This document shows positions 7,261 through 54,380 of a stretch of DNA of 64,000 nucleotides, in pieces. The notes below the pieces were generated by a model. The model had not been told where the DNA came from. It saw only the letters and a program-made list of their open reading frames with translations, and ran no database searches. Within the stretch, counting starts at the first letter, position 1; each line of letters opens with the position of its first letter. The stretch is from IMG/VR virus record IMGVR_UViG_3300031884_000002, positions 186,001 through 250,000 of that record, one strand, 5' to 3'. The translations under genes were made by a program, and so were the position numbers.

Positions 7261-7268
7261 TTATAAAA

Positions 7269-11501: not shown

Positions 11502-11585
11502 AGTTTAACAGTCTATAGTAAAAATAAGTATCTTTCAACTTTTTTTAAAACCGGATTTTATTAAACTTTTTTATATTAAAATAAT

Positions 11586-11613
11586 TTGACATTTTTCATT
11601 TTTAATATATACT
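11586..11613 (+). promoter_or_regulatory. sigma70-type promoter TTGACA-16-TATACT
   Basis: Upstream of 11686; the leader has SD-like AGAAAAGG. Confidence 0.7.
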
Positions 11614-11685
11614 TATAGGTAAGATACGAAATCGGATGTAGGTCCGCCAAGTTCTTAAATATTAACAATAAAAGAAAAGGTATAT

Positions 11686-34463: not shown

Positions 34464-34466
34464 AAA

Positions 34467-34501
34467 AAATCCTTCCAAATATAAGTATATAGGAAGGATT
34501 T
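34467..34501 (-). promoter_or_regulatory. Hairpin with SD-like 3' arm and a promoter-like motif in its loop
   Basis: AAATCCTTCC-tatatacttatattt-GGAAGGATTT, then TTT ATG. Confidence 0.6.
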
Positions 34502-34573
34502 CAAACCGCAATATATTTTATTTATAATTACGCAATCTTATCTTTGATTATGTTAATATTGCGTAATCGTAAG

Positions 34574-35121: not shown

Positions 35122-35829
35122 TTATATATAAATATACTGAAAAAATGTTTTATTCGAAAAATTATATCTCCAAAATTTTTTAGGTTTTAACGTATCAATT
35201 ATTTTTTGTTGTCTAATTTTATCTTTTTTACGTTGTGCTTCTTTATTATGATATTTACTATCATATTCCAATACCACATTATGAATTGGATCATATCCAT
35301 CTATATAAAACATATTGTTTCCTGTTTTTAATTGATAATTTAATACGAAATTAAATCCCAATTTATTCCATTTATCTATAAGTTCCTTATGTCCTTTATC
35401 CATTGCTATATTATTCCACTTACATCTATCAATCATATGTTCCCGTTTAAGTGGATTTTTCCATGCTTTTTTAACAGATTCTGATACTTTTTTCTTTGTT
35501 TCTTCACTTAATGTTGTTCCTAAATATCTATTTCTTTGTTTTAACTTCATTTCAGCCGTATGTTTTCGTCCAAACATTGGATGTTTATCCCCGCTTACCA
35601 TTTTTCCAAATTTCTCTTTATTTAGAGAAGACCAAGTTGGTTTACCTATCTCAATACAAGAATGACATAATTGACCTTTAGAGATAGAACATGACATTTC
35701 ATACATTGTGTTTGGATTCCCCGTTTTTCCTATAACTTCAGAACCACACGAAGGACACCGTTTACACCATTTTCCTTCAATGTTTTTCCAAATTTTTCCA
35801 GTCTTAATATGTTCTTGGACTTTACTCAT
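35122..35829 (-). CDS. Free-standing endonuclease (Zn-ribbon, NUMOD3-like, PD-(D/E)xK)
   Basis: CPSC..CHSC; HPMFGRKHTAE; FYIDGYDPIHNVVLEYDSKYH. Confidence 0.75.
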   Translation of the reverse strand: MSKVQEHIKTGKIWKNIEGKWCKRCPSCGSEVIGKTGNPNTMYEMSCSISKGQLCHSCIEIGKPTWSSLNKEKFGKMVSGDKHPMFGRKHTAEMKLKQRNRYLGTTLSEETKKKVSESVKKAWKNPLKREHMIDRCKWNNIAMDKGHKELIDKWNKLGFNFVLNYQLKTGNNMFYIDGYDPIHNVVLEYDSKYHNKEAQRKKDKIRQQKIIDTLKPKKFWRYNFSNKTFFQYIYI

Positions 35830-41075: not shown

Positions 41076-44000
41076 TTAAGAGATTGTCGGAAATGACGCA
41101 CCAGTAGTCGTAATGGTAATTGGAATCTTCAAAAACTCAGCAGTCTTGGTTGGTTTAATCCAAAGTTGACATACCATTATATTCTGGTCTTCCAATGCAG
41201 GAGTATTATTAGATGCATCCATTACTAATTGGAACGCATATAATCCGCTTCTTTGTTGAACTCCTTCTAAGTATGGATTTGCAATCGCAAGAAGTTTATT
41301 CCAAGTTGCCGCATTACTCTGTTCGAATAATACGTATTTTCCAACTGATGCAAAAAACTTTTTGATATTGATTAATAATCTACGAACACTAATTCTATTA
41401 GTAGCATTAGATGCATTTTGAAGTGTTTTTTGACCCCATACCACAAATCCTTCATCTGGAAATGATACGATAGGATTAACCTTTCCTTCGTATAATGTAT
41501 CACGCTCACTATTGATTACACGATCAGTAACTCCTACTGCTCCGGGAATACCACCACGATTTAAACCAGCAACCGCAAACCATTCTGCTGATACATTATC
41601 ACTTGCGGCATAAACGGCTGGTAATACTACAGATGGAGGAACAGTTACAATTTGATTTATATTTGTATCAAGTATTCTTACCCATGGATAATAAGTTCCG
41701 GCATAACTTGTATCAAATTCAGCAGCCAAATCAACAGTTTCGGTTATTTGACCCGTAGCCGGATTTCCACCATCTTCATAGATATCAAGAATATAAAACA
41801 CATCGCCACGAGTTTCACACATGTCAACTACTAAATTAGTAACATATGAATGTAATGAATAAATAATACCAGGAGTGGTGATTAAATTAATATCCCATTC
41901 ATCAGCATTACTAAGAGCACCTATACATTGAGCATAAGCAACTGAACCTGCGGCAGTACTGTTAGCACAATTTAATCCTTGGGTATTTCCAGCTACAATA
42001 TTATCACCAACATTGACTGGGATAGAAGGAGCCTGACCATCGAATCCACCTTGGAACCCAAGAATAAAGTTTCTCATTTTAACATAAGTACTTTCATTCA
42101 CTGGATCAACACTGGCAGAAATAACAGTACTTCCATTTATAAATGACCCAGTACTAACTCCGAAATCAGTATATTCAACATCCAATGCGAATAGTTTTCC
42201 AGCCGATACAGAATTAGCTGGAACCGGAGCAAAATAAGGTAAGTTATCAGGATATGCATCGACCCCCATTGAACAAGTTGGGTATAATCCAATTAACTCA
42301 GCGTCGGCGCTATTAGGAGGACCAGCAAAATCAACACCGGATGGATATTTTCCGGGATATAATCCATATACAGATGCCTTGGTATATGCCATGTGAGTAA
42401 CAAACATTCCAATTCCTCCGGCTAACGGTGAAGAATATGCAGCAAATCCATAAGGAACAGCAGTTACGGGATAATTCGTATCTGCCATTTGTATTCTTAT
42501 ATATTGGCTTACATTTGCATAAATACCATATGTTACAATTTTACCATTAAAATTGATATATGAATATTGATCTCCGATTACACGAGCAATATAATTAGGA
42601 GATGTAGGATCTAAAGTTAAATTATTATATTGCTCCAATATAACTGGCTGTCTATCAGTATCATCAAATGCTCTTACTGTAAGAGTGAATGATCCCCAAT
42701 CACTACCGGCAACCTGAGTTGCTAATTTTACATTGGAGATTTGTATTTTGCATAGTTGATTTGCATAAGTACCATCTGCTAACGTAGCAACTTGAAACAA
42801 ATTAAAACGAGTTGGAGTTCCACCGTTCCACGATGCAATTTGTTGAGATAATATCCAAGGAGTATACGCATTAGTCAATGAATAAACAGAATCTCCTTTA
42901 GTTGGCTGGAATGAGTTTGCATCGGTAAAGTTTAAAGGTTCTCCTGCATATGCAGTTGATCCAGAAGGCATTGCCGACCCAAATATTTTCCAATTATTAG
43001 GTTGAGATACAACTTCTGCTATTTTTGAAGGATATAAGTTATAAAGATATGCAGATTCAATCTTGGTTCCCGCCGCATAGGTTGCTTGATTACCAGCCGT
43101 TGGATTATTTCCGAATACATTTGTAATATAATGTGGATCGCTTTCGACCAATGAAAAATTATATATTCCATATCCACTACCCAATGAAGAACTTAGAACA
43201 ATTGCAAAATTATCAGCAGGTAAATTAGCCAATTGTGATGCAGTTGTAAATCCATAAGAACTACTTAATGTAGAACCATAAAATCCCGGAACTTGCAAGG
43301 TAGAAGTATTTAAGTTTTCCCATTGTGTATTTCCCAATACCGCTAATACTTTTTGAACGGGAGCACCAGTCCATTGGAACGAACAAGTATTATATACACC
43401 GGAACTTGCATAAAATCCACCATCTAAATATCCAAATGAACCACTCAAACATCCATTAACTATTAAACTTACATTTCCACAATGGTCAGTTGAGGTAATA
43501 ACTCCACCATTCATTATATAGATATCAGGAGCACCAACCGCAGGATTTCCTAAATCTTGAGAATCGGAAATTACAGAACTATTAGCCGATATAATTTGAG
43601 AAGTATAGAAGGTAGGTGGATATTGTTCGAGTGGAACATTTCCTTGAGTATAATCAAAACTTGCACTTAATCCGGCACTAAATAAAATACTGCTTAATAT
43701 AGAAGCAGATGCGGCAGATCCAGTCAATGCAAAAAATGATGCTGATGAAACTTGAAATGCTCCTGTATAAAGTAAAGTTCCATTAATATTACCAGCCGCA
43801 GTTTGACCATAATAAATTAAACTTCCACTTGGTCCCGGAGTCCCTGCAATCGCAGTTCCTTGTGCCGGTTGTAAAGTTAATGATGATGCAACTCCATTAA
43901 GTTCAATTGAACCACTTACATATACCGTATTAACATAAAATCCAGTAAAACTTCCAGTACCTGAAAAACTTCCTGTACCAGTTAAGCTTCCAGTAATCGT

Positions 44001-44585
44001 AGAAGTTCCAGAAACGGATAACCCGCTTCCGCTTTGAGCAACTCCTCCATTTATACTTCCCGTACCTGATAAAAATCCAGTTCCGGAAAAATATCCACTT
44101 CCACTAAAAATACCATCAACATTAGAAATACTACCGGGAGATGAAAAAGAAGCAGTATAAGGATAAGTTACGCCCGCTGTATTAAATGACATTCCAATTG
44201 GAATCTGGCCATATGCTGGAAGTGTAATATTTGAAGATTGAGATACTAAATATCCACAATCCATAGCACGAGTCCATTCTCCACTTTGAGCATAAATAAC
44301 AAATGGATATTTTTGAGTATATCCGGTTAATGCTCCAACACGACAAACAGTGACAAATCCTTTAGCCTGTAAATATTGAGTGGCAGTATAAGGACCATAA
44401 TAGGTTCCATCAGGAGTTCCAAATTGTGCCTGTAAGGTTGGAATATCGGTAAATGTAGTTGGATAAAACCCAACTCCTTGAGGAAATGGTGCCACGACAA
44501 CTGCGCCAATATCAGCAACGCCTTGAGCGATACCAGATTGGTTTATTTCGTTTATAAAAACACCGGGAGAAATCATGTTTGACAT
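41076..44585 (-). CDS. Contractile tail sheath protein (T4 gp18-like) with large insertion
   Basis: ISPGVFINE; YAGTYYPWV..WFAVAGLNRG..LYEGKVNPI..VWGQKTLQ..RISVRRLL..LFE..KPTKTAEF. Confidence 0.95.
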   Translation of the reverse strand: MSNMISPGVFINEINQSGIAQGVADIGAVVVAPFPQGVGFYPTTFTDIPTLQAQFGTPDGTYYGPYTATQYLQAKGFVTVCRVGALTGYTQKYPFVIYAQSGEWTRAMDCGYLVSQSSNITLPAYGQIPIGMSFNTAGVTYPYTASFSSPGSISNVDGIFSGSGYFSGTGFLSGTGSINGGVAQSGSGLSVSGTSTITGSLTGTGSFSGTGSFTGFYVNTVYVSGSIELNGVASSLTLQPAQGTAIAGTPGPSGSLIYYGQTAAGNINGTLLYTGAFQVSSASFFALTGSAASASILSSILFSAGLSASFDYTQGNVPLEQYPPTFYTSQIISANSSVISDSQDLGNPAVGAPDIYIMNGGVITSTDHCGNVSLIVNGCLSGSFGYLDGGFYASSGVYNTCSFQWTGAPVQKVLAVLGNTQWENLNTSTLQVPGFYGSTLSSSYGFTTASQLANLPADNFAIVLSSSLGSGYGIYNFSLVESDPHYITNVFGNNPTAGNQATYAAGTKIESAYLYNLYPSKIAEVVSQPNNWKIFGSAMPSGSTAYAGEPLNFTDANSFQPTKGDSVYSLTNAYTPWILSQQIASWNGGTPTRFNLFQVATLADGTYANQLCKIQISNVKLATQVAGSDWGSFTLTVRAFDDTDRQPVILEQYNNLTLDPTSPNYIARVIGDQYSYINFNGKIVTYGIYANVSQYIRIQMADTNYPVTAVPYGFAAYSSPLAGGIGMFVTHMAYTKASVYGLYPGKYPSGVDFAGPPNSADAELIGLYPTCSMGVDAYPDNLPYFAPVPANSVSAGKLFALDVEYTDFGVSTGSFINGSTVISASVDPVNESTYVKMRNFILGFQGGFDGQAPSIPVNVGDNIVAGNTQGLNCANSTAAGSVAYAQCIGALSNADEWDINLITTPGIIYSLHSYVTNLVVDMCETRGDVFYILDIYEDGGNPATGQITETVDLAAEFDTSYAGTYYPWVRILDTNINQIVTVPPSVVLPAVYAASDNVSAEWFAVAGLNRGGIPGAVGVTDRVINSERDTLYEGKVNPIVSFPDEGFVVWGQKTLQNASNATNRISVRRLLINIKKFFASVGKYVLFEQSNAATWNKLLAIANPYLEGVQQRSGLYAFQLVMDASNNTPALEDQNIMVCQLWIKPTKTAEFLKIPITITTTGASFPTIS

Positions 44586-44701: not shown

Positions 44702-44968
44702 TTATACTGTGGAAGATGGTGTAAAAGTTCCATCGGTTAAACTTAGATTTCCTTCGCCATAACTACTAAGAATCTTATTTAACAGGTCTTTTTCTGTTTT
44801 TTGAAGGTTAATCCATGCCGCTTCTGTTTCTTTTTCTGCGTTCTCAAGATTTAATCTCTCTACTTTAAGAGTTCCAAATCGCAATAATGTTTGCTGAATA
44901 TTAGATTGTAACTGTTTAATATCGGACATTTCCGATTCTTTTAATTTTACTGGAGTAACTTTATTCAT
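44702..44968 (-). CDS. Small coiled-coil hypothetical protein
   Basis: 88 aa; ends YGEGNLSLTDGTF. Confidence 0.6.
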   Translation of the reverse strand: MNKVTPVKLKESEMSDIKQLQSNIQQTLLRFGTLKVERLNLENAEKETEAAWINLQKTEKDLLNKILSSYGEGNLSLTDGTFTPSSTV

Positions 44969-45003: not shown

Positions 45004-45432
45004 TTATATTTTGATTTTTTCCAATGCCGACGTATCGGCATAAGTATAATATTCATCTTCAGATGTTTGTATTGTATTCCATATGGTTTCGGCTCTACCT
45101 ATTCTATGGTCCTTACCCGATACAATTCCCTTATAACGATTAGATAAACAATATTTCAATGCTGCTTGATATAATAATAGTCCAAATCCTTCTTTTTTTT
45201 GAACTGCTGATATGAAATCCACATATAAATAACCACTTTTTGGTTTTATATCCCCCAAATCATCAAAATTAGAAGTTAAAGTTATGTATCCCAATGCTTC
45301 ATTATTATCCGACAACATATCTATACTGATTGAATATTCATTATTTTTAATAGTAGAAAATTTTATTTTTCCTTCTTTATATAAAATAAATGCTAATTTT
45401 TCTTCAGTTAATAATGATTTTAACTTAATCAT
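45004..45432 (-). CDS. GNAT-like acetyltransferase with MIKLK leader
   Basis: LGYITL..YVDFISAVQKKEGFGLLLYQAAL..AETIW. Confidence 0.6.
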   Translation of the reverse strand: MIKLKSLLTEEKLAFILYKEGKIKFSTIKNNEYSISIDMLSDNNEALGYITLTSNFDDLGDIKPKSGYLYVDFISAVQKKEGFGLLLYQAALKYCLSNRYKGIVSGKDHRIGRAETIWNTIQTSEDEYYTYADTSALEKIKI

Positions 45433-46208
45433 ATAAAATATGTTTTATAGTTTATATTTTCATTTAGAGGATTGTAATTATTCCAACCTGATAGTTCATA
45501 CTGATATTTTTGCAATTTAATATTTAATTCTCGTATTTCATTTTCCATTCCTCCCATAGAGTCCAATCTTTCAATTTCACGTTCTATTTTAGGTATTTCA
45601 TATGTTAAAAATAAAAATCTTTTTTCTTTTATACTTGATAATTTAGCCTCATCTAATTTTTCTTTGGGTAAGTCGAAATGCATCTTTTCACCTTTAATTG
45701 GAGAATATACTATTTTATCAATAGTTACTTCCATGTCTACCACTGTATCTTTTTCATCGAATGAATTAGATTTAACATATGCCAATGTAAGATGGGGATG
45801 ATATATTGGATGAGAATCTTCATTGGGAAACTCACATGCTGCTTTATTTAATTTTTTAATAACATCGGATTCTACATCATATTTAACAACATCAAATCCT
45901 TTTTCTTTATTTTTGAATTGACTTATACTTTTAAGCGTAGCTTTAAATTGAATTACATCTTTGATTAAATTTTCAATTTCTTTTTTAGTAAGATCAGGAA
46001 AAAAACCATACTTTATAGTAATATGAATTTCTTCTAATTCTCTTCCCATTCCTTCTTCTTTTGTATATAAAACATCGTCTGATATTATATCTTTTCCAAT
46101 TTTAATTATTTTTTTAGAATCTTTATCACTGATGAAGCACATTAAACATCCATAATCAACGGATTTTTTTCCACGGTCTTCATTTAACATATTTTTTAAT
46201 TTAATCAT
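45429..46208 (-). CDS. 2H phosphoesterase (T4 57B/Acb1-like) with MIKLK leader and C-terminal coiled coil
   Basis: Two HxT motifs (HITIKYG, YHPHLTLAYVK); YGCLM near the N-terminus. Confidence 0.75.
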   Translation of the reverse strand: MIKLKNMLNEDRGKKSVDYGCLMCFISDKDSKKIIKIGKDIISDDVLYTKEEGMGRELEEIHITIKYGFFPDLTKKEIENLIKDVIQFKATLKSISQFKNKEKGFDVVKYDVESDVIKKLNKAACEFPNEDSHPIYHPHLTLAYVKSNSFDEKDTVVDMEVTIDKIVYSPIKGEKMHFDLPKEKLDEAKLSSIKEKRFLFLTYEIPKIEREIERLDSMGGMENEIRELNIKLQKYQYELSGWNNYNPLNENINYKTYFI

Positions 46209-46211
46209 ATA

Positions 46212-46973
46212 TCAAGAAGGGTCATATCCCCATTCAAAAATAGAATTACCATCCGTATATAAATCTTTAACAGGAACAACTTTAGATAATATTCTATATC
46301 TATCAAACTCAGTTTTACCATGTGTAACTGCATAATCTCGTATTGGAGTAACCCAATCACCTGGATTTATTTTAACTTCTGATTCTTCGGATGTCATTTT
46401 CTTTTTTATTCTTTCTTCTTCATTGCATAAATAATCATAATATTTACTTTTATCTGTAAAATATTTGACATGGGCTGGTATTTTTCCAGTTTTTAATATA
46501 TATTTCTTTTGTTTTTCAATATCTTCCAATTTTTCTTGGGAAGTCAATACCATTGGAACCGCTCGATAAACTCTTATTTTCAAGTTCGGCTTGTCTTTTA
46601 TACTCCTATAAATAGAAACTGCTAATCTATCTAATGTTTCATTGGAGCCATATCCATAAAATCTATATGCTTCAGGAGAAGTGTAAATATCGGGATATGT
46701 AGTGGTGAGATTATATACTGGGTCATCTGTTCTATCTGGAGCAGAATGATTTCCTCTATAATTTTCATCTTCGGTTAATACCGTTAATTTTCCAATCTTT
46801 TTTAAGAAATTGAGTATGGTTTCCCATGCTTTTTCAACATGACCGTTTTCCAACATCATATCAACTTCAAGTTTTAATTCGGGGTCGGCAGAATCATAGA
46901 ATAAAGTTAATTCATGAATACCAACCATTCCAGTATATATGGCTTCTTTTATTAAGTCAGTTAATTTAATCAT
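46212..46973 (-). CDS. Two-module protein with ADP-ribosyltransferase-like domain and MIKL leader
   Basis: RVYRAVP..INPGDWVT..YA..HG..EWGY resembles the ART strand pattern. Confidence 0.5.
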   Translation of the reverse strand: MIKLTDLIKEAIYTGMVGIHELTLFYDSADPELKLEVDMMLENGHVEKAWETILNFLKKIGKLTVLTEDENYRGNHSAPDRTDDPVYNLTTTYPDIYTSPEAYRFYGYGSNETLDRLAVSIYRSIKDKPNLKIRVYRAVPMVLTSQEKLEDIEKQKKYILKTGKIPAHVKYFTDKSKYYDYLCNEEERIKKKMTSEESEVKINPGDWVTPIRDYAVTHGKTEFDRYRILSKVVPVKDLYTDGNSIFEWGYDPS

Positions 46974-48418
46974 ATTTGTTTAATAAATTTCAATGGCATT
47001 TTATATCCTACGATAATAGTATAAGGAGATATACCTTCTGAATGATAATCAGACGGAATTTCTCCTAATTCTAACTCATATGATATATATTCTCTAACCA
47101 AGTGTTCGGCAACTTGAGGTTCATATTCTAAGTTTAATTCTGGTATTTTTAATTCCGATTTAAATGCCGGAAGATTTATTTCTAAACATATGTTTCCATA
47201 AGTTCCGTTTTGATATTCTTCTGGATTTACGCTTGTAAATATACCATGTGCGCTTCTATTATTTATTCCCGTTCCACCACTACCCACTAACTCTCCGTCT
47301 TGTTTAATCAATTCCCAGTTTTCTTCAGTTGTATAATGATACACTGGACTTGGATTCGATTTAAACTCTTTTAATGTGGTTTCAAGATGACCGTTATAAA
47401 TATCATCGGCACTTATATTTACTACTTGTTCTGCATCATTTGAATAAGTCCAATCTATTATATTCTTAATAACGTCGAATGATTCGTTTTCTTTGTTATA
47501 TTCTAACCAAATTATATTATTTTTTAAGTCATATAATTTTATTATTTTCTGATTAAAATATGAACTATATTCTAAATCAAATCTATTTTTTAATTTGGAA
47601 ATTTCCGATTTAGGACATTCATAATCAAAATGGTCCAGATACTCCTGCCAATCATCCCATTTATCAGAATCTTCCGGATACATCTCATCTCTTTCTAAAT
47701 CCGTTATTTCTGATAAAGATTTAGGTTTAAATTCGTCTTTTTCAATTCCTACTATTTTAATTTGTGTATTGAAAAATACAAAGCAATCAAAACTTCCATC
47801 GGAACCACCATCTGGAAGAATGGCACCATCATACCCATCTCGTTTTAATTCTCCTAAACTCATTTTTTCATATTCATCCCATCCAGCCGGATTATTTAAT
47901 GTAACTATTGCAGTTATAATATAACCCTTACTATTAGCACCTGATTCTCCTTTTACTATTTTTTCTTTGTTTGAAGTAAACCACACTATTCCGTGAGTTG
48001 ACTTTTTAATATTAAAAGTTTTAAACGGTTCTTTAGTTCCATGATAAACTGTTAATTTTCCTTTTATATTTTCTGATAATCCATGTGCTTTCATTTGTAA
48101 TTTTTGATAATTTAATTTATCATTTGAACTGATACTATTAGTTTTAGTTACATGGTAATACGGGAATCTTTTTTTAATCAATGCTTTAACTTCTTCTCTA
48201 ATATCCTCGGATGGTTGATTATACCAATAAATGGTTTGATTACTAGCATTATATCTAAAATTATATTTATCTCTATTGTAACTCCATCCATATTTATCCA
48301 ATAAATCCGAGTGACTTTCTATATTACTATCCATTATTATATTGAAATCATCATCCACACATCCCACAATGATATAAGGAGATTTAATTTCATTTAATAA
48401 TATTTTCAATTTAATCAT
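46970..48418 (-). CDS. Multidomain protein with ART-PolyVal-like domain, a second ART-like domain and MIKLK leader
   Basis: VYHGT..F..F..GIVWFT..LNNP..GYDG..VF..QIK; later VYHYT..GIFTS..YG..LEI. Confidence 0.65.
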   Translation of the reverse strand: MIKLKILLNEIKSPYIIVGCVDDDFNIIMDSNIESHSDLLDKYGWSYNRDKYNFRYNASNQTIYWYNQPSEDIREEVKALIKKRFPYYHVTKTNSISSNDKLNYQKLQMKAHGLSENIKGKLTVYHGTKEPFKTFNIKKSTHGIVWFTSNKEKIVKGESGANSKGYIITAIVTLNNPAGWDEYEKMSLGELKRDGYDGAILPDGGSDGSFDCFVFFNTQIKIVGIEKDEFKPKSLSEITDLERDEMYPEDSDKWDDWQEYLDHFDYECPKSEISKLKNRFDLEYSSYFNQKIIKLYDLKNNIIWLEYNKENESFDVIKNIIDWTYSNDAEQVVNISADDIYNGHLETTLKEFKSNPSPVYHYTTEENWELIKQDGELVGSGGTGINNRSAHGIFTSVNPEEYQNGTYGNICLEINLPAFKSELKIPELNLEYEPQVAEHLVREYISYELELGEIPSDYHSEGISPYTIIVGYKMPLKFIKQI

Positions 48419-48480
48419 AATCCCTTTGATTTTAAATATTGTTTAATCATATCCAAATATTCTGATTTAATACTATTCAT
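48415..48480 (-). CDS. 21-aa mini-ORF coupled to the next gene
   Basis: MNSIKSEYLDMIKQYLKSKGL*; TATTTATA 5 nt upstream; ATGA overlap. Confidence 0.4.
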   Translation of the reverse strand: MNSIKSEYLDMIKQYLKSKGL

Positions 48481-48496
48481 ATTTATATAAATATAT

Positions 48497-49471
48497 TTAT
48501 TTAGATATAGAATTTACTATTTGTCTAACCTTCTCAAATGATATTTTAATATTGCATAATTGTAATTTTTTAACGATTGTTCGTATGGATGCTCCCGTAT
48601 TTCTTAAAGTTATTATAGATGTTTTTTCGTAATCTGTAATAGGTCTATACTTATGATGATTTTCTTTACTTCTATAATATTTATATTTTCTGAATATATT
48701 ATTATCAATTAATATTCTTTTTATAACATCGTATCCATAATTTTTATATTTTAATTTTTTAATAGTGTTCATTAACCCATATTGCTTATAGTTTTGTATA
48801 ATTTCCATCTCATCTTTGCGTGTTACGAATTTCCATTGATGGTGTTTATCTTTACTTAATAATCCTATATGAGATATGCTTATTTTTTGTTTTGATTTTT
48901 CGGTGTGATGCTTTCCATACCAATGAGATTTTTTTCCGTTTAAAATTGGAGTGTTTGATTTTATTTTAGCAATTGTTTCTTGTGTATGATGTTTTCCATA
49001 AAATGGATTTCCTGTACCACTAAATAGTTTTTTCATTTTAAGTTTATATTCTTCAGTTGGAATGTATCCACTCGCTCCTTCTCCACCATTTGTTAAATTA
49101 CATAGTTTTATATTATTCTTTTTGGCCTTTTTTATTTCGTTTATTTCTAGTTCAAATGCTTCTTTTTCAGTAATATTCTTTTTTATAAACAATACCTTTA
49201 CATCGTGTCCTAAGTTTATTATTTTTTTTATTTTATTAAATAAATGTAAATTATTATTTGGAATTTCGTTTTTTTTAACTTTTCGGATATGTTCGTAATA
49301 TCTATATTTACACCCCTTCCCAATGTAAAATACAATATTATTTACTGGATCTATTAAATTATATACATAAAATCTATTTTCTTTCTTTCCAATACTTTTG
49401 CATACGTTTTCGTTTAATTTGCTCTGAATTTTTTCTATACCAATTTCGTTTCCATCTTCGTTCGGCTTCAT
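48497..49471 (-). CDS. GIY-YIG homing endonuclease with NUMOD3-like repeats
   Basis: FYVYNLID..FYIGKG..R..H..E..LCNLTNGGEG; NPFYGKHHT, HWYGKHHT. Confidence 0.88.
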   Translation of the reverse strand: MKPNEDGNEIGIEKIQSKLNENVCKSIGKKENRFYVYNLIDPVNNIVFYIGKGCKYRYYEHIRKVKKNEIPNNNLHLFNKIKKIINLGHDVKVLFIKKNITEKEAFELEINEIKKAKKNNIKLCNLTNGGEGASGYIPTEEYKLKMKKLFSGTGNPFYGKHHTQETIAKIKSNTPILNGKKSHWYGKHHTEKSKQKISISHIGLLSKDKHHQWKFVTRKDEMEIIQNYKQYGLMNTIKKLKYKNYGYDVIKRILIDNNIFRKYKYYRSKENHHKYRPITDYEKTSIITLRNTGASIRTIVKKLQLCNIKISFEKVRQIVNSISK

Positions 49472-49511
49472 ATTTTTCTTCTTTTGTATTGTATATTTTA
49501 TTTCTTCCCAT
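49374..49511 (-). CDS. 45-aa basic mini-ORF overlapping the GIY-YIG 5' end out of frame (copy 2)
   Basis: MGRNKIYNTKEEKYEAERRWKRNWYRKNSEQIKRKRMQKYWKERK*. Confidence 0.65.
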   Translation of the reverse strand: MGRNKIYNTKEEKYEAERRWKRNWYRKNSEQIKRKRMQKYWKERK

Positions 49512-49573
49512 AACTTTTATTAACCTTTCTACATTATAAATATATAACTACAAACATAAAACTACAAATATTT

Positions 49574-51127
49574 TCATTTATTTTTAATTATATTTCTAAC
49601 TATATTAAATGCTTCGTCTCTTGTTAAATTTGGATTTTCATATATAGCATCTCGTATAGCGTCTAATATTTCTTTATAAATTGGACCCCTTGGTATTTTT
49701 AACGATATTAAATCATCACCAGTTACCGGTAATTTATCGGTTTTCTTTGGAATTGAGTTTTTTAATGCGTCAATTCGTCTTATAATATTTGGTATTTGTT
49801 CTGGATTTGTATGACTTCCTTCATGAGACGCATTATCCGCCGACATAACATCCAAGGTTGCTTCCAAATGGTCTCCCAAATCAACTACAAACTTTCTAAG
49901 TGCTTTATCAGTCACTAATTCTCCTTTTTCACCGGACCTTTTAAGTCGCATATGATTTTTAATTCCGGCAACTACTGGATTTATAATTTCCGATGGATAT
50001 TTCAGATTAGTTAATATTTCTCGTGCCATGTCAGCACCTATATGCTCGTGCTCATAAAAATGGATTTCTCCATCAACTATAGTTTTGGTTTTTACTTTAC
50101 CAACATCGTGAAACAATGCCATTAATCTATTTATTAGATTAGGTTTAGTTTTCTTTAATACTTCGAGTGAATGCATCCATACGTCGTGTTTATGATATTT
50201 ATTTTGACCCATTCCTATTGCCTGTTCCAATTCCGGTGAAATATATTTCATTGCCCCAATATCTTTTAACATATCCAATGCTTCGGCTGGATGGTCGGTT
50301 AATAACATTTTATTCATTTCATCTCGGATACGTTCTTTCGAAATGTGTTGTAATTCATTTATATTACGTTTCATTCCTTCTAACGTTTCTTCGTCTAAAG
50401 TGAATCCATATTTTATAGCGAATCTGACTCCTCTCAAAATCCGCAAACTGTCTTGTTGATATATTTCATCGGCAGGAGAAGTAGTTTTTAATATTCCATT
50501 GTGAATATCTGATATTCCTCTTCCGGTTATATCCAATACTTTACTAGTAGTTAAATCAAACACCAAGCTATTGATAGTGTAATCTCTTCTATAGATATCA
50601 TCTTCTATGGTTCCTGCTCTTACAATTGGCTTCCTACTTCCATGTATATATTCTTCTTTTCGTGCGGCAACACATTCTATATCCATATTAGATAAGTCAA
50701 TTCCATTATATTCTACCCCTTTCAAAACAAACTTAGCAGTTCCAAATGTAGGAAATAATACAGGATTTGACATATTCTTAGTGTATTCTGCTAATTTTTG
50801 TAAAGTGGCTTCATCTTTATTACAAATTAAATCCCAATTTGTTTTTATAAATTGTATAAACTCTTTAAATACAACTTCCGTTGGACCTTTATAATTTTTC
50901 ATAAATAAGGTAGCCCAACGAGCAAACTCCATTCCTCCAGTTATATCGTGATTTGTTACAACCACATCCAAATCTTTTGGTGAGCCACCCATTTCCATAT
51001 CCCTCACTGCGCCACCAGCAAGATATACTTGTCCTCTATACGGTCCTTCTTGTACCAATTTCTTTAGGTATTCTATGGCTGTGGTTTCTACAACACCTTC
51101 GTTTAATAACATTTTCAATTTAATCAT
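49574..51127 (-). CDS. cca: tRNA nucleotidyltransferase (CCA-adding/poly(A) polymerase family) with HD domain and MIKLK leader
   Basis: LAGGAVRD..DLDV, RRDYTIN, QDSLRILRGVRF, ISKERIRDE, ALFHDVGK. Confidence 0.88.
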   Translation of the reverse strand: MIKLKMLLNEGVVETTAIEYLKKLVQEGPYRGQVYLAGGAVRDMEMGGSPKDLDVVVTNHDITGGMEFARWATLFMKNYKGPTEVVFKEFIQFIKTNWDLICNKDEATLQKLAEYTKNMSNPVLFPTFGTAKFVLKGVEYNGIDLSNMDIECVAARKEEYIHGSRKPIVRAGTIEDDIYRRDYTINSLVFDLTTSKVLDITGRGISDIHNGILKTTSPADEIYQQDSLRILRGVRFAIKYGFTLDEETLEGMKRNINELQHISKERIRDEMNKMLLTDHPAEALDMLKDIGAMKYISPELEQAIGMGQNKYHKHDVWMHSLEVLKKTKPNLINRLMALFHDVGKVKTKTIVDGEIHFYEHEHIGADMAREILTNLKYPSEIINPVVAGIKNHMRLKRSGEKGELVTDKALRKFVVDLGDHLEATLDVMSADNASHEGSHTNPEQIPNIIRRIDALKNSIPKKTDKLPVTGDDLISLKIPRGPIYKEILDAIRDAIYENPNLTRDEAFNIVRNIIKNK

Positions 51128-51129
51128 AT

Positions 51130-51744
51130 TTAATAAGTATATGGTTCATAAATCTCATGTGGCAATCTCAATGCTAACAATGCAATTTCAACTTCTTTCA
51201 AACATTCGTTGACTCCACCACCAGTTAAAACAATATTTCTATAATTTTTCAAAAAATCCATTAAATCAGGTATATTTACACAATCTCTACTATCTCTTAA
51301 CAATTCGTATACTTCTTTTCTGTCTGTTCTTCTATACTCTCTTAAATATTTAGCCCACATTTCACGAGTCATATCTCTAGAATCTCGTATGTCATTTTCA
51401 TACATGAATCTTACAAAATTAGCAATTGTATCATCTGCTAAATTATTGTCAATACAATATCTAAAAAACGCATATCCTTTATCATACCAGATAGAACTAT
51501 TAATCACATCTTCGTTCAATCCTTGTTCCATGAACCAATATTTATATTCTGATTCATCAGGAAATCCTAAATCCGGACCATTAAATAAAAATATTAATTT
51601 ATAACAATCTAAATTGTTTAGAAATTCACAATATCTATCCATCCTAAAACCAAATGATTTTCGATATTCCGGTTGAATATCTACCGATATAAAAGTTTTA
51701 CCATTGAATGATTCTTCAGTTAAAATGGATTTTAGGTTTATCAT
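51130..51744 (-). CDS. Isochorismatase/cysteine-hydrolase-like protein with MINLK leader
   Basis: FISVDIQPEY..DKGYAF..IVLTGGGVNECL. Confidence 0.5.
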   Translation of the reverse strand: MINLKSILTEESFNGKTFISVDIQPEYRKSFGFRMDRYCEFLNNLDCYKLIFLFNGPDLGFPDESEYKYWFMEQGLNEDVINSSIWYDKGYAFFRYCIDNNLADDTIANFVRFMYENDIRDSRDMTREMWAKYLREYRRTDRKEVYELLRDSRDCVNIPDLMDFLKNYRNIVLTGGGVNECLKEVEIALLALRLPHEIYEPYTY

Positions 51745-52559
51745 AAAAATATAAGTTTATATAATTCTTTTATAAACTGTCTCCATCGAACCGGCTCTTT
51801 CTTTTTCATATCATCTATATTTTCCAGTATTTCATTCAATCTTTCATCTCTGTAAAATGCATTATTTGAATAATTATTAGATATTAGTTCTTTAAATGCG
51901 GTTTCCCATTTATTCTTAGGGAAGTTTTTATTTAGATATCGTTTAATATGAAACGCATATGTATGAAGATTAGTTTTAAACTCTATATCTCGCATATGGT
52001 GAGCAGTTCTACCCGAACTTGATGAGTTATATCCTAATAAATCAGTTGTTCGATTTAACACTTTTTCCTTTGGTAATCCGGTTTTTGATATCATTTGAAC
52101 CAAATGACGAAGTTCATGTTTTACCGTATCAATCAATTCGTCTGTTGATTTTTTAAAACTATGTATAAACGAATACGTATCAATTATAATATATAATTCG
52201 GTTGGATTTTCTTCCACTTTAACATATCCTGTATTAGAAGAATTAAACCCGTTTGTAATTCTAACTACAATATCCGGAAACTCTCTTTGTTTTGATAATA
52301 TTCTAAAATCGGATAGTCCCCAAGCTGTATCTACTTTATATGATTCAATTTTAAATAATAATCGTCCTTCTTTTTTGTATTGGGTTGCTAATCTATAATA
52401 TTCGTTATATTTTATTATCGAATGATTCGATTTAGTTTTAGAATGTTCCGCTCTTGTTTTGAAATAAGGTAAAAATAATGCCGCAATATATTTTGCGGCT
52501 GCTGTTGCCAATGCATCAGCCTCAACCTGTAATTCAAAGTTTTCTGTTAACTCTATCAT
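51741..52559 (-). CDS. Zincin-like metallopeptidase
   Basis: TVKHELRHLVQ (HExxH) with downstream Glu (DIEF). Confidence 0.6.
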   Translation of the reverse strand: MIELTENFELQVEADALATAAAKYIAALFLPYFKTRAEHSKTKSNHSIIKYNEYYRLATQYKKEGRLLFKIESYKVDTAWGLSDFRILSKQREFPDIVVRITNGFNSSNTGYVKVEENPTELYIIIDTYSFIHSFKKSTDELIDTVKHELRHLVQMISKTGLPKEKVLNRTTDLLGYNSSSSGRTAHHMRDIEFKTNLHTYAFHIKRYLNKNFPKNKWETAFKELISNNYSNNAFYRDERLNEILENIDDMKKKEPVRWRQFIKELYKLIFL

Positions 52560-53131
52560 ATATTCTTAAGAAACGTATCAAAATATTTATTATTTCTTCC
52601 CAGTTCTATTTTTTTACCATTTTTATCAATGGCACTTCTTTTATATTCGGCAGTTGCTGTTTTCCAATCACCCAATAAAACAGCTCTTACAAACTTTGGA
52701 AAGTGTCGTATTGTACCTAAATTATAAGCAAAGTCAATCAACATTTCTTCTTTGTGCTGGTCCAATGTCGGAATATTAACTTTAAACATGTGTTTAATAT
52801 CGGAATATACTTTTCCTTTGGCAATTGTCAAATCTCTGATAAGCAATTCATTTGCTTGTTTATCAGTTATTCCGTTTTTAAATAGATGCATTTCATTATT
52901 TTCTATTTTATGCCCAAATCCTATATGTGGACCGGTTGGGTCTTGATACATGTGCCATATTCCATTTTTATATCCTTTATTTATTCCATTCTCCACATTT
53001 TTAATGTATTTTATTAAAGTGGGTGAAAACTCATGGTGCGTATTCGATTGAATATGACCGGAAGGAATGTCAATATTTTCAAACACAAAAAAATTTTTGT
53101 ATTTCGGAGTTTGGGTTTTTGCGTAGCACAT
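52556..53131 (-). CDS. Phage lysozyme (GH24, T4 lysozyme-like)
   Basis: VENG..YQDPTG.HIGFGH..GIT..ANELL..DL..IDFAYNLG..FPKF. Confidence 0.8.
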   Translation of the reverse strand: MCYAKTQTPKYKNFFVFENIDIPSGHIQSNTHHEFSPTLIKYIKNVENGINKGYKNGIWHMYQDPTGPHIGFGHKIENNEMHLFKNGITDKQANELLIRDLTIAKGKVYSDIKHMFKVNIPTLDQHKEEMLIDFAYNLGTIRHFPKFVRAVLLGDWKTATAEYKRSAIDKNGKKIELGRNNKYFDTFLKNI

Positions 53132-53189
53132 AAATATAAATATAATTTTAATTAGTTAAACAAGAAATCCACTCATATTTATTATTTAT

Positions 53190-54380
53190 ATGAATAATGA
53201 AGAATATCAAGAATATAATAATGCGTTGATTCGCTGGCCGGGGAGCGGTAGTTTGGATGTTGCTTCGTTAACTATATTTGGAAATTATAATAATGACGCT
53301 CAATTTATACGAGATTGTATAGGAGCATCGAAATGGGCATGTTTAAGATTAGGATATCCAACGGTTGATGTAGAATTAGTAGATAAGATAATATATCCTG
53401 CTTTTGAAGAGTCTGTTAATGAATATAATGCAAAAGTAAATGAGTTTAATGCTATTAACAATATGATAGCATTACAAGGACAGACCATTTCATCTACGAA
53501 TGGAGGAGTAACTGGAAAAGTAGTAAACTCAACGGGTCTTGAAAGGATGACTATAATCGCTCGTGATTATGGAAGTGAAGCAGGTAGCGGTGGTAATTAT
53601 GATTGGAAAATGGCATCATTTCAAGTTTATCCAAATCGGCAAACCTATGATTTACAAGAACTTATAGGATTTGGAGAGGATTGTAATAGAATTGAAATCA
53701 AAAGAATATTCCACGATAGACCACCCGCATTTCAAAGAATATATGATCCATTTTCCATGACTGGAATGAGTTATTCTAATATTTTAACCGAATTAGGATT
53801 TGGAGCATATAGTCCTGCAACTCAATTTTTAATGTGTCCTATATTCGAAGACATGTTAAGAGGTCAAGCCATTCAATTTAATGATTTAGTTAGAAAGTCG
53901 GCATTTTCATTCCACGTTGCCAATAATAAAGTAACTTTATTTCCAGTTCCTGAATGTGGATATAAATGTCATATTCAATATACCACTGATAATATCAAAT
54001 TAGAAAACAATTCTTTATATGGAGATGGAACTAATGTTATTAGTGATTTAGCCGACATTCCATATTCGGTTCATCCATATTCCAGTATAAATGATGCTGG
54101 AAGACAATGGATTAGAAAATATTTCTTAGCAAATTGTAAAGAAATATTAGGATGTATTCGTCAAAAAGTTCAAACTTTACCAATTCCCGGTGGAGAAACG
54201 ACTTTAGATGGTGCAGAGTTAAGAAGCGAGGCACAGCAAGAAAAGCAACTATTACAAGATAATTTGAAAGAAATATTAGAAAACACAAGTAAATATAATC
54301 AGATGGAAAAACAATCTGCTTACAATTCGCAGTTAATGGATAATTTAAAAGCGGTTCCTCTTGGATTATATATATTTTAA
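53190..54380 (+). CDS. Neck/head-tail adaptor protein (T4 gp13-like)
   Basis: RLGYPTVDVEL..QWIRKYFLA..LG.IR.K..IPGGETTLDG.EL..EA. Confidence 0.8.
   Translation: MNNEEYQEYNNALIRWPGSGSLDVASLTIFGNYNNDAQFIRDCIGASKWACLRLGYPTVDVELVDKIIYPAFEESVNEYNAKVNEFNAINNMIALQGQTISSTNGGVTGKVVNSTGLERMTIIARDYGSEAGSGGNYDWKMASFQVYPNRQTYDLQELIGFGEDCNRIEIKRIFHDRPPAFQRIYDPFSMTGMSYSNILTELGFGAYSPATQFLMCPIFEDMLRGQAIQFNDLVRKSAFSFHVANNKVTLFPVPECGYKCHIQYTTDNIKLENNSLYGDGTNVISDLADIPYSVHPYSSINDAGRQWIRKYFLANCKEILGCIRQKVQTLPIPGGETTLDGAELRSEAQQEKQLLQDNLKEILENTSKYNQMEKQSAYNSQLMDNLKAVPLGLYIF

What the first reader, a model, noticed from the sequence alone, without database searches (positions are those of the whole stretch)
45004..52559. 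Cassette of unrelated enzymes sharing an N-terminal tag: candidate capsid-packaged effector delivery system
Seen: MIKLKSLLTE (GNAT-like), MIKLKNMLNE (2H phosphoesterase), MIKLTDLIKE (ART-like), MIKLKILLNE (two ART-like domains), MIKLKMLLNE (CCA enzyme), MINLKSILTE (isochorismatase-like) and a shorter MIELTE (zincin). The six full tags are exactly 10 aa ending L/I-x-E, with unrelated sequence after. Internal LxE sites (VLTE, GLSE, SLSE, KLDE) fall at apparent domain borders. Known: T4 internal proteins carry a 10-aa capsid-targeting sequence ending in Glu that gp21 removes at L/I-x-E, and these domain types recur in polyvalent proteins. Inference: a modular tag loads host-takeover and anti-defence enzymes into the head for injection with the DNA. 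Caveat: ATGA overlaps favour an MI start but do not explain the rest of the tag.
Basis: partly seen in the sequence, partly recalled or inferred. Interest (0 to 1): 0.85.

Follow-up and report, generated by a model that had tools for sequence, protein, structure and literature searches.

The report
Capsid-targeting tag on phage enzymes
A 354-kb uncultivated T4-like phage puts the same 10-residue leader (MIKLKxLLxE) on a row of unrelated enzymes. The comparative evidence says this leader is the local version of the phage T4 signal that loads proteins into the capsid and is then cut off by the head protease, so these enzymes are probably injected with the DNA.

Summary
Six consecutive minus-strand genes (45004-51744) start with M-I-[KN]-L-[KT]-x-[LIM]-[LI]-x-E. 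A seventh starts MIELTE. The motif occurs nowhere else in the window; 0 matches are expected.

The capsid-targeting reading is strongly supported, but only by comparison:
- The same genome encodes a gp21-family prohead protease and a gp23-family capsid protein. The capsid protein keeps an I-x-E site aligned with T4's known cleavage site.
- Two more tagged genes sit beside the capsid gene.
- In relatives chosen without reference to the tag, tagged genes cluster between protease and capsid genes, and the cargo falls into about 100 unrelated families.
- The conserved tag positions (4, 7, 8, 10) are those that matter in the T4 sequence.
- Whole domains are inserted or deleted exactly at [LI]-x-E sites.
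- In fusion proteins the tag persists as an internal linker.
- The tag is essentially absent from 596 Gb of cellular genomes.

Cargo annotations:
- Solid: CCA-adding/HD enzyme, 2H phosphoesterase, ART-PolyVal.
- Weak: GNAT, isochorismatase-like, zincin.
- Unconfirmed: ART for 46212-46973.

Packaging, cleavage and injection remain untested. This is a new variant of a known system.

The parts
52556..53131 (-). Phage lysozyme, untagged. It is the first gene of the minus-strand run that continues into the tagged cassette.
   Evidence: Pfam Phage_lysozyme, E=4e-10. T4 has the same order: e (lysozyme), then ipIII, then ipII. A 40%-identical homologue in L121/L183 carries the tag MIKLGKIIKE.
53183..53190 (-). 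TATAAATA (T4 late-promoter-like octamer) about 50 nt upstream of the lysozyme start.
   Evidence: There are 42 matches in the window against 27 +/- 5 expected. This is weak evidence for timing.
51741..52559 (-). 272-aa protein with a short leader MIELTE and an HExxH motif (HELRH). Possible zincin peptidase.
   Evidence: No Pfam or PDB hit. The Atlas gives only weak neighbours: LPD23 and SprT-like.
51130..51744 (-). Tagged 204-aa protein (MINLKSILTE) from a phage-only family. The isochorismatase-like label is a weak lead.
   Evidence: The orthologue in L002 is 80% identical and has the tag MIKLKSILTE.
49574..51127 (-). Tagged class-II tRNA nucleotidyltransferase (CCA-adding/poly(A) polymerase family) with an HD domain. 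Tag MIKLKMLLNE.
   Evidence: Pfam PolyA_pol, PolyA_pol_RNAbd and HD; PHROG 2244 at 2e-58. There are 650 homologues. Of the 81 short ones, 52 start with the 10-aa tag. All 33 fusion proteins examined keep an [LIMFV]-x-E linker before the domain.
48497..49471 (-). Untagged GIY-YIG/NUMOD3 homing endonuclease inserted in the cassette.
   Evidence: Pfam. No counterpart among the cassette genes held for L002.
48480..48487 (-). TATAAATA about 60 nt upstream of the 46970-48418 gene.
46970..48418 (-). Tagged 482-aa multi-module protein. Layout: tag MIKLKILLNE; N-terminal module ending GLSE116; ART-PolyVal module 117-237 ending SLSE237; C-terminal ART-superfamily-like domain.
   Evidence: ART-PolyVal scores 37.7 bits (cut-off 31.2). 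Tpt1/KptA and Tox-ART-HYD1 hits are weak. L002 lacks exactly residues 117-237.
47708..47719 (-). SLSE (residues 234-237), downstream border of the ART-PolyVal module.
48071..48082 (-). GLSE (residues 113-116), upstream border of the ART-PolyVal module.
46212..46973 (-). Tagged 253-aa protein. Layout: tag MIKLTDLIKE; 58-aa module ending VLTE68; then a 185-aa domain of unknown function that also occurs inside large polyvalent phage proteins.
   Evidence: 231 homologues, most of them a short leader ending hydrophobic-x-E followed directly by the domain. The AlphaFold2 model has pLDDT 93. No PDB fold match. BFVD matches to 560-1475-aa phage proteins at E down to 2e-18.
46770..46781 (-). VLTE (residues 65-68). 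L002 has an extra module of about 100 aa inserted exactly here, ending GIRE.
45429..46208 (-). Tagged 2H phosphoesterase (tag MIKLKNMLNE; HxT motifs HIT and HLT) followed, after KLDE187, by a C-terminal coiled-coil tail.
   Evidence: Pfam 2_5_RNA_ligase2 scores 33.9 bits (cut-off 27); Acb1 scores 24.6 bits, below its cut-off of 27. L002 has an extra module of about 125 aa inserted at this site, ending QLDE.
45648..45659 (-). KLDE (residues 184-187), module border in the 2H protein.
45004..45432 (-). Tagged 142-aa protein (MIKLKSLLTE). The GNAT label is weak.
   Evidence: Acetyltransf_1, E=0.014, 16.1 bits against a cut-off of 20.7. The orthologue in L002 is 79% identical.
44702..44968 (-). Untagged 88-aa gene, conserved next to the sheath gene in relatives. 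It marks the cassette's downstream boundary.
41076..44585 (-). Tail sheath, 1169 aa.
   Evidence: PHROG 23 at 1e-57. It was used to fetch relatives L001-L080.
53190..54380 (+). T4 gp13-like neck protein, divergent from the cassette.
   Evidence: Pfam Phage_T4_gp13. In relative L223, three tagged ORFs lie directly upstream of the 50%-identical homologue.

Best explanation
The decapeptide M-I-K-L-K-x-[LI]-[LI]-x-E is this phage lineage's version of the T4 capsid targeting sequence.

Proposed mechanism. All steps are inferred by analogy with T4.
1. The cassette is expressed with the structural genes.
2. The leader docks each protein onto the scaffolding core while the prohead assembles.
3. After the shell closes, the gp21-family protease cuts after Glu10. 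It also cuts at internal [LI]-x-E linkers and so separates multi-domain cargo into single domains.
4. The mature enzymes stay in the head with the DNA and enter the next host cell with it. They can then act before any phage gene is expressed.

Shown by sequence and comparison:
- the tag and its position-specific conservation;
- its modular use on unrelated cargo;
- its linkage to gp20-gp21-gp23 head modules;
- the protease and a T4-type cleavage motif in the capsid protein of the same genome;
- domain borders at [LI]-x-E.

The likely cargo functions are tRNA 3'-end repair (CCA enzyme), RNA-end healing or cyclic-nucleotide hydrolysis (2H enzyme) and ADP-ribosylation of host targets, as T4 Alt does.
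For: Specificity
- The tag is confined to 6 ORF starts in the window, with 0 expected.
One of those 3 is a mis-binned T4-like phage contig.

Linkage to head modules
- 49 of 120 tag-selected loci carry TerL, portal, gp21 and gp23 around the tagged ORFs.
- In loci selected only by gp21 or capsid-protein similarity, 39/80 and 49/79 carry tagged ORFs. 128 of those 134 tagged ORFs are on the strand of the head genes.
- The motif occurs at 4-5% of first-Met ORF starts against about 0.1% of internal Mets.

Same genome (JGI Ga0316229_1000015, 353,817 bp)
- Peptidase_S77 gp21 homologue at L372:1292-1918, with GELDH and GISSRGTGS motifs and LIE at residues 9-11.
- Gp23-family capsid protein at L371:8158-9885.
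- Two more tagged ORFs directly after it, at L371:10787-11194 and 11207-12028.

Cleavage motif
- T4 gp23 Glu65 is the end of its 65-residue propeptide (PMC9026906).
- That residue aligns with an invariant Glu preceded by [LI]-x in this genome's capsid protein.

Tag anatomy
- Conservation is strong at positions 2, 4, 7, 8 and 10 and collapses after 10.
- In T4 IPIII, residues 4 and 7 determine targeting and residues 8 and 10 determine processing (PMC9026906).
- T4 IPII and IPIII start MKTYQEFIAE.

Modularity
- 274 unique tagged proteins form 98 clusters.
- Pfam finds ARTs, CCA/HD, NUDIX, lysozyme, NT5C, P-loop kinases and a phosphoribosyltransferase among them.

Same cargo, different leaders
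- The 46212-46973 domain family carries leaders such as MKTFKEFLIE, MKSFKQYFLE, MISLRQLILE and MKLSNILFE in other phages.

Linkers
- Three whole-module insertions or deletions between the window and L002 are bounded by [LI]-x-E.
- 33/33 CCA fusion proteins have such a site, often a whole internal IKLKxLLxE, just before the domain.

Peptide-level selection
- Leu4 uses TTA, CTA, CTT, TTG and CTC, and upstream DNA is unconserved.
Against: - There is no experimental evidence. No virion proteome exists, and no cultured relative was found.
- The window cassette is not next to the protease or the capsid gene. It lies about 36 kb from the capsid gene and about 54 kb from the protease gene.
- The tag resembles the T4 sequence in pattern only, not in residues.
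- Late-promoter evidence is weak.
- [LI]-x-E is a short motif that also occurs inside domains (one search lists 4-8 sites per protein), so not every site can be cleaved.
- Only about 150 kb of the 354-kb genome was examined for tags.
Confidence: 0.78

Rival explanations
1. The leader is a protease-removable propeptide or core-association signal used only during head assembly. On this view the proteins are accessory scaffold or core components, or zymogens. They are degraded or expelled before DNA packaging and are not delivered to the next host.
For: In T4 most core proteins (gp22, gp67, gp68) are cut into fragments that leave the head (PMC9026906). Many tagged ORFs lie exactly where scaffold genes lie, between gp21 and gp23, and about three quarters have no enzyme domain.
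Against: Cargo with clear host-directed or nucleic-acid enzymology has no plausible scaffold role. This includes the CCA-adding enzyme, ARTs, NUDIX and the 2H enzyme. T4's own tagged proteins (the IPs, Alt) are retained and ejected. Linker sites separate intact domains rather than shredding them.
Confidence: 0.1
2. The conserved start is a nucleic-acid-level feature. It would be either an A/T-rich translation-initiation enhancer in a genome without obvious Shine-Dalgarno sites, or a 30-nt homology block that promotes cassette shuffling by recombination. It would have no role as a peptide.
For: Most cassette genes lack an obvious Shine-Dalgarno sequence. Cassette content and order differ between the window and L002. 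ATGA overlaps favour Met followed by an A-starting codon.
Against: - Synonymous codon variation includes first-base changes at Leu.
- Glu10 is invariant with a sharp boundary after it.
- The motif is absent from the window's other genes and from cellular genomes.
- The same peptide occurs internally as a domain linker, where initiation is irrelevant.

Recombination at tags may still contribute to shuffling as a secondary effect.
Confidence: 0.03
3. The leader targets proteins somewhere else or marks them for turnover. Examples: a degron for the phage-encoded ClpP, or a membrane or other subcellular address.
For: The window encodes a ClpP homologue next to Hsp20 (33085-33651 and 32478-32975).
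Against: - The tag co-occurs with gp21/gp23 modules across hundreds of contigs.
- The cleavage motif matches that of the capsid propeptide.
- There is no hydrophobic signal-peptide core.
- T4 provides a precedent for exactly this anatomy.
Confidence: 0.04

Closest known systems
[quoted passage not shown]
   Same: - A 10-residue N-terminal leader ending [L/I]-x-E.
- Hydrophobic residues at positions 4 and 7.
- Attached to unrelated, fast-evolving proteins.
- A gp21-family protease and a gp23-family capsid protein are present.
- The genes lie downstream of a lysozyme gene, as in T4 e-ipIII-ipII.
   Different: - The residues differ: MIKLKDLLNE against MKTYQEFIAE.
- Cargo includes large recognisable enzymes and multi-domain proteins rather than small basic proteins.
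- The same motif is reused as an internal linker.
- The lineage is an uncultivated environmental clade that includes 300-350-kb genomes.
T4 Alt, a virion-packaged ADP-ribosyltransferase
   Same: An ADP-ribosyltransferase that is loaded into the head, trimmed by gp21 and injected. Its short N-terminal propeptide (7 residues, PMC9026906) resembles the 6-residue MIELTE leader.
   Different: The cassette ART belongs to the ART-PolyVal family, not the Alt/Mod family. No sequence homology to Alt was tested or claimed.
Polyvalent proteins of phages and conjugative elements (Iyer et al. 2017, PMC5512222)
   Same: - The same domain repertoire (ART-PolyVal, polyvalent-protein-associated domains, NUDIX, GNAT, lysozyme).
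- Predicted packaging and injection.
- Proteolytic release of domains.
- The 46212-46973 domain occurs inside 560-1475-aa phage proteins.
   Different: Here the domains are mostly separate ORFs, each with its own leader. The predicted processing enzyme is the head protease acting at [LI]-x-E, not an embedded zincin peptidase domain.
Inner-body and ejection proteins of phiKZ, 201phi2-1 and SPN3US (PMC5694885, PMC7411985)
   Same: Giant phages load many proteins into the head. A distant gp21 homologue cleaves them after Glu at a three-residue motif.
   Different: - Those proteases cut at a different short motif.
- No shared N-terminal decapeptide is known there.
- The capsid and tail lineage is different.
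Phage P1 Dar system and N4 virion RNA polymerase
   Same: Virion-delivered anti-restriction or early-function proteins.
   Different: Unrelated incorporation mechanisms. No shared leader.

Membership tests
T4-type capsid targeting sequence / internal-protein system | N-terminal leader of about 10 residues: hydrophobic at 4 and 7, L/I at 8, Glu at 10 | tested here: met
   Six window ORFs. In 91 non-redundant tagged proteins from tag-independent samples, L4 is 92%, L/I7 is 91%, L/I8 is 85% and E10 is 100%, with no conservation after position 10. Positions 1, 2, 4, 8 and 10 were partly fixed by the search pattern. Positions 3, 5, 6 and 7 were free and are still conserved.
T4-type capsid targeting sequence / internal-protein system | Leader is portable, attached to unrelated mature proteins | tested here: met
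   98 cargo clusters from 274 proteins, with diverse Pfam families. The window's six are mutually unrelated.
T4-type capsid targeting sequence / internal-protein system | Same genome encodes a gp21-family (Peptidase S77) prohead protease with catalytic motifs | tested here: met
   L372:1292-1918 on the same 353,817-bp contig: PF03420, 252 bits against the clade profile, His and Ser motifs present.
T4-type capsid targeting sequence / internal-protein system | gp23-family capsid protein with a propeptide ending at the same cleavage motif | tested here: met
   L371:8158-9885 (PF07068). I-E-E aligns with T4 L-T-E65, and the Glu is invariant across the 5 sequences aligned. Actual cleavage was not tested.
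T4-type capsid targeting sequence / internal-protein system | Genes linked to head or virion morphogenesis genes and expressed late | tested here: inconclusive
   Linkage is met. The window cassette lies between the sheath and neck genes. Timing rests only on TATAAATA motifs.
T4-type capsid targeting sequence / internal-protein system | Proteins present in virions with the N-terminus at residue 11, and ejected on infection | not testable with these tools
   No isolate and no proteome. No close cultured relative in the phage collection.
T4-type capsid targeting sequence / internal-protein system | Sequence homology of the leader to MKTYQEFIAE | tested here: inconclusive
   Ten residues are too short for a homology test. 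Intermediate leaders (MKTFKEFLIE, MISFKEYLQE, MISLRQLILE) occur on one cargo family, and MxxFxxx[IL]xE leaders occur in phage Melnitz. These suggest a continuum.
Polyvalent proteins (PMC5512222) | Two or more effector domains in one polypeptide, drawn from the polyvalent repertoire | tested here: met
   46970-48418 has ART-PolyVal plus a second ART-like domain. Relatives fuse the CCA domain into 535-1179-aa proteins. The 46212-46973 domain matches polyvalent-protein domains.
Polyvalent proteins (PMC5512222) | Embedded processing peptidase (zincin-type) domain | tested here: not met
   No peptidase domain in the tagged proteins. The neighbouring HExxH protein is a separate ORF with no family match.
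Acb1 anti-CBASS phosphodiesterase | Match to the Acb1 family above its curated cut-off | tested here: not met
   24.6 bits against a cut-off of 27. The generic 2H family passes at 33.9 against 27. Substrate is unknown.
Class II tRNA nucleotidyltransferase with HD domain | PolyA_pol head, RNA-binding and HD domains | tested here: met
   E-values 2e-19, 9e-21 and 1e-7. CCA-adding and poly(A) activity cannot be told apart by sequence here.

The most novel reading that the evidence does not exclude
A very large, uncultivated clade of T4-like phages uses one decapeptide both as capsid address and as inter-domain cut site, and so builds a programmable 'ejectome'. Hundreds of cargo families would be loaded into the head as tagged proteins or polyproteins and injected.

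Among them would be an RNA-repair and NAD-centred counter-defence kit: a CCA-adding enzyme conserved in more than 600 homologues, a 2H phosphoesterase, ARTs, NUDIX and NT5C. That would be the first virion-delivered tRNA-repair enzyme. The tag would also give a sequence-only way to list injected effectors in metagenomes.
Probability: 0.4. Interest if true: 0.8.

Novelty: new variant of a known kind. Interest (0 to 1): 0.64.

Why it matters
If the tag works as inferred, three things follow.

1. **A census of injected proteins from sequence alone.** Any protein that starts with it, or is preceded by it inside a fusion, in this abundant environmental phage group can be predicted to be injected. 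That would turn metagenomes into a catalogue of time-zero host-takeover and counter-defence proteins, most of which have no known fold or function.

2. **New kinds of cargo.** The T4 internal-protein idea would extend from small inhibitor proteins to large enzymes and to polyproteins cut by the head protease. A packaged tRNA 3'-end repair enzyme would point to host defences that attack tRNA ends in these systems.

3. **Practical uses.** It would supply new targeting peptides for loading foreign proteins into phage capsids. It also gives a caution for annotation: one public gene call starts the CCA enzyme at Met6 and so hides the tag.

Tried and rejected
**Searches that found nothing**
- Megablast of the cassette and of two tag-bearing loci against 50,697 phage records gave no match.
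- tblastn of one common cargo family (the L109 181-aa protein) against the phage records found nothing.
- A literature search for 'MIKLK' found only unrelated epitope papers.
- PDB sequence searches for four cargo proteins gave nothing useful.
- No tRNA genes in the window or in the walked and related loci. A role for the CCA enzyme in maturing phage tRNAs therefore has no local support, though most of the genome was not scanned.

**Failed routes to this genome's head genes**
- A capsid-protein profile scan returned 80 other contigs.
- A protein search with a relative's capsid protein listed 120 hits, none from this genome.
- Walking left from the window found sugar-biosynthesis genes.
- Walking right succeeded.

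**Ideas considered and dropped**
- The window's ClpP homologue (33085-33651) as the head protease. It is a Clp-family protein next to Hsp20, not a gp21-type protease.
- The ART fold for 46212-46973. The best PDB match was Tpt1 at E=0.94, TM 0.23.
- Tag as a generic bacterial N-terminal motif. Only 3 matches in the genome collection.

Full report
**1. What the window is**

The window is AT-rich, about 30% G+C. It comes from a 353.8-kb viral contig, IMGVR_UViG_3300031884_000002. Near-identical contigs of about 353.7-353.9 kb were assembled in 16 samples.

On JGI contig Ga0316229_1000015, window position x corresponds to record position 257854 - x. I derived this.

Tail and neck genes are T4-like:
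- sheath at 41076-44585;
- gp19-like tube and a T4 baseplate protein;
- gp13-like neck protein at 53190-54380.

No close cultured relative exists in the phage collection.

**2.

Six consecutive minus-strand ORFs begin M-I-[KN]-L-[KT]-x-[LIM]-[LI]-x-E. A seventh begins MIELTE.

- The motif occurs nowhere else in six frames of the window.
- A degenerate DNA pattern for it gives 6 matches against 0.00 expected.
- The sequence upstream of each ATG is unrelated, and the tag codons differ synonymously.
- After residue 10 the proteins are mutually unrelated.

Pfam supports three cargo labels above the curated cut-offs:
- a 2H phosphoesterase;
- an ART-PolyVal domain;
- a class-II nucleotidyltransferase with an HD domain.

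The GNAT label is below the cut-off. No family was found for 51130-51744 or 51741-52559, apart from weak Atlas leads.

An untagged GIY-YIG/NUMOD3 homing endonuclease interrupts the row.

**3. The tag is widespread and specific to phages**

- Nearly all matches are at ORF starts. They are often in tandem, and the sequence after the tag is unrelated.
- The same pattern found 3 matches in 596 Gb of bacterial and archaeal genomes.
- One of the three is a T4-like phage contig binned as an archaeon. One is not at the start of any ORF of 30 or more residues.

**4. The tag lives in T4-type head modules**

I used the annotated head genes of Methylophilales phage Melnitz as probes. Of the 120 tag-selected loci, 49 carry TerL, portal, gp21 protease and gp23 capsid genes within the fetched flanks. 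The tagged ORFs lie mostly between protease and capsid genes.

To remove selection on the tag, I fetched loci by gp21 similarity alone and by capsid-protein similarity alone.

| Sample | Loci with tagged ORFs | Tagged ORFs | Rate at first-Met ORF starts | Rate at internal Mets |
|---|---|---|---|---|
| gp21-selected | 39 of 80 | 67 | 67/1681 | 7/5724 |
| capsid-selected | 49 of 79 | 67 | 67/1291 | 3/3795 |

Of these 134 tagged ORFs, 128 lie on the strand of the head genes.

Long-sheath relatives of the window phage have tagged ORFs next to the sheath, and several of them have T4-type head genes close by.
- L012 has a gp21 gene at 22098-22706.
- L223 has a sheath about 55% identical over its C-terminal part and a gp13 that is 50% identical. 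It carries gp21, a capsid gene, and three tagged ORFs just before gp13.

**5. The same genome has the machinery**

I walked the contig rightwards from the window and found the following.
- A scaffold-like gene.
- A gp23-family capsid gene at L371:8158-9885.
- A GIY-YIG endonuclease, followed immediately by two further tagged ORFs, MIKLKRLLLE and MIKLKDLLLE.
- About 15 kb further on, a 208-residue Peptidase_S77 (gp21) homologue at L372:1292-1918. It has intact GELDH and GISSRGTGS motifs and L-I-E at residues 9-11. T4 gp21 is reported to have an LIE site at the same place (PMC9026906).

I then aligned the capsid N-terminus with T4 gp23. T4 Glu65 is the end of the 65-residue propeptide removed by gp21. 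It aligns with an invariant Glu preceded by I-E here, by L-D in relatives and by L-S in Melnitz. The protease's [L/I]-x-E logic therefore appears to be conserved in this clade.

**6. The tag's anatomy matches the T4 targeting sequence**

T4 IPII and IPIII begin MKTYQEFIAE. Published mutagenesis places targeting at residues 4 and 7 and processing at residues 8 and 10. gp21 cuts after Glu in L/I-x-E (PMC9026906).

In 91 non-redundant tagged proteins from the tag-independent samples, conservation peaks at positions 2, 4, 7, 8 and 10 and drops to background at position 11. Some of these positions were fixed by the search pattern. Position 7 was free, and L/I is 91% there. Free position 3 is also clearly conserved, and free positions 5 and 6 less so.

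Leu4 is encoded by five different codons, and upstream DNA is not conserved. This argues for selection on the peptide.

**7. One cargo, many leaders**

The C-terminal domain of 46212-46973 has 231 homologues. Most are simply a short leader followed by the domain. All leaders end in hydrophobic-x-E just before a conserved DYRGEH motif. Examples:
- MKTFKEFLIE and MKSFKQYFLE (close to T4);
- MISFKEYLQE, MISLRQLILE and MIKLTSILPE;
- MKLSNILFE.

The family also occurs in KVP40-like T4-type Vibrio phages and in mycobacteriophages.

Melnitz, a T4-like marine phage, has a run of genes starting MxxFxxx[IL]xE. One of them shares a C-terminal domain with an MIKLK-tagged protein.

**8. [LI]-x-E marks domain borders**

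Comparing the window with its closest relative L002 (sheath 75% identical) shows three whole-module differences, each bounded by the motif.

| Protein | Site in window | Difference |
|---|---|---|
| 46212-46973 | VLTE68 | L002 has about 100 extra residues after it, ending GIRE |
| 46970-48418 | GLSE116 and SLSE237 | The window has the ART-PolyVal module between them; L002 joins GLSE directly to the C-terminal domain |
| 45429-46208 | KLDE187 | L002 has about 125 extra residues after the aligned INE site, ending QLDE |

The CCA enzyme has 650 homologues.
- Of the 81 short ones, 52 start with the exact 10-residue pattern.
- Most of the others have 7-11-residue variants ending L-x-E just before the first conserved helix.
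- In all 33 longer fusion proteins with a recognisable core, an [LIMFV]-x-E site sits just before the CCA domain. It is often a complete internal IKLKxLLxE, and once it includes the Met.

This is what a protease-cut polyprotein linker should look like. A translation-start signal would not be retained in that position.

**9. Cargo**

Pfam on 83 representative tagged proteins found ART-PolyVal, an exoenzyme-type ART, Tox-ART-HYD1, CCA/HD, NUDIX, lysozyme, NT5C, Zeta-toxin/AAA_33-type kinases and a phosphoribosyltransferase. About three quarters had no family.

For the 46212-46973 domain:
- a confident AlphaFold2 model, pLDDT 93;
- no significant PDB fold match;
- matches to domains inside 560-1475-aa phage proteins, including one named as polyvalent-protein associated.

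It is therefore a polyvalent-protein domain of unknown function, not a demonstrated ART.

The repertoire overlaps that described for polyvalent proteins, which were predicted to be packaged and injected (PMC5512222).

**10. Mechanism and confidence**

The best-supported model is as follows.
1. The tag docks cargo on the scaffolding core.
2. The gp21 homologue removes it after Glu10 and cuts the internal linkers.
3. The mature enzymes remain in the head and are ejected with the DNA.

The sequence anatomy and the genomic associations are shown. Packaging, cleavage, ejection and function are inferred.

Roles I think likely:
- tRNA 3'-end repair by the CCA enzyme;
- RNA-end healing or cyclic-nucleotide hydrolysis by the 2H enzyme (its Acb1 score is below the cut-off);
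- host-protein or nucleic-acid ADP-ribosylation, as for T4 Alt.

These roles are my inference from family knowledge.

**11. Novelty**

The principle is established for T-even phages: a conserved targeting sequence on diverse internal proteins (PMC3012670; PMC9026906).

New here:
- the distinct leader sequence;
- its spread through a large uncultivated clade that includes genomes of 300-350 kb;
- large enzymes as cargo;
- reuse of the leader as an internal polyprotein linker.

I found no description of this leader in the searchable literature. I rate it a new variant of a known kind.

Noticed in passing
window 17310-17717 (-), 14166-14483 (-); L372:8041-8247: Small ORFs carry pieces of head proteins. 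A 135-aa ORF resembles gp21 residues about 39-142 but lacks the His and Ser motifs. A 105-aa ORF joins a gp23 N-terminal-like stretch to a gp21-like stretch. A 68-aa Gp23-family fragment lies elsewhere in the genome. They could be remnants, decoys or regulators of head assembly.
   Followed up: partly
window 6290-8552 (-) and 14581-16940 (-): Intein splicing domains lie in a B12-type ribonucleotide reductase and in a RecA/UvsX-like protein. Both genes appear as adjacent ORF pieces.
   Followed up: no
window 48497-49471 (-); 35122-35829 (-); 33654-34511 (-); L371:10001-10762: There are many homing endonucleases. One GIY-YIG gene splits the tagged cassette. Another follows the capsid gene, just as segD follows gene 23 in T4.
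   Followed up: partly
window 33085-33651 (-) and 32478-32975 (-): A phage-encoded ClpP homologue lies next to an Hsp20 gene, between tail tube and baseplate genes.
   Followed up: no
window 35831-37969 (-): A 712-aa protein has an adenylate-cyclase-N / nucleotidyltransferase-like N-terminal domain. The first 321 residues are 90% identical to L002, but the rest differs.
   Followed up: no
L372:10001-13787 (same genome, outside the window): An NAD-related cluster (NUDIX, NAMPT/NAPRTase, NADAR) sits between the protease and capsid genes. This may be relevant to a phage that carries ARTs.
   Followed up: no
L377 (LR756501.1, the 735-kb uncultured phage) 1475-7428: The CCA domain is the C-terminal part of an 1179-aa ORF. 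The three ORFs just upstream start MIRKFKIFE, MITEFRLYE and MIKKFKLFE, which may be another leader variant.
   Followed up: partly
L201 2119-11617 (Methylophilales phage Melnitz-3): A cultured T4-like marine phage has a run of genes starting MQGFKTFLSE, LINFSKYITE, MTRYNKTMSE and MKNFKNHIAE. These are unannotated candidates for internal proteins.
   Followed up: partly
window 49574-51127 (-): The public gene call for this protein is 512 aa, starting at Met6 (MLLNE...). Automatic annotation can therefore hide the tag.
   Followed up: no
L375 (PBHZ01000028.1): A 20-kb contig binned as a Methanobacteriota archaeon MAG carries TerL, portal, gp21, a tagged ORF and gp23. It is a T4-like phage contig.
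   Followed up: yes
window 41076-44585 (-): The sheath is unusually long (1169 aa), with a Gly/Ser/Thr-rich repetitive insertion in its N-terminal third. More distant relatives have sheaths of about 770 aa.
   Followed up: no
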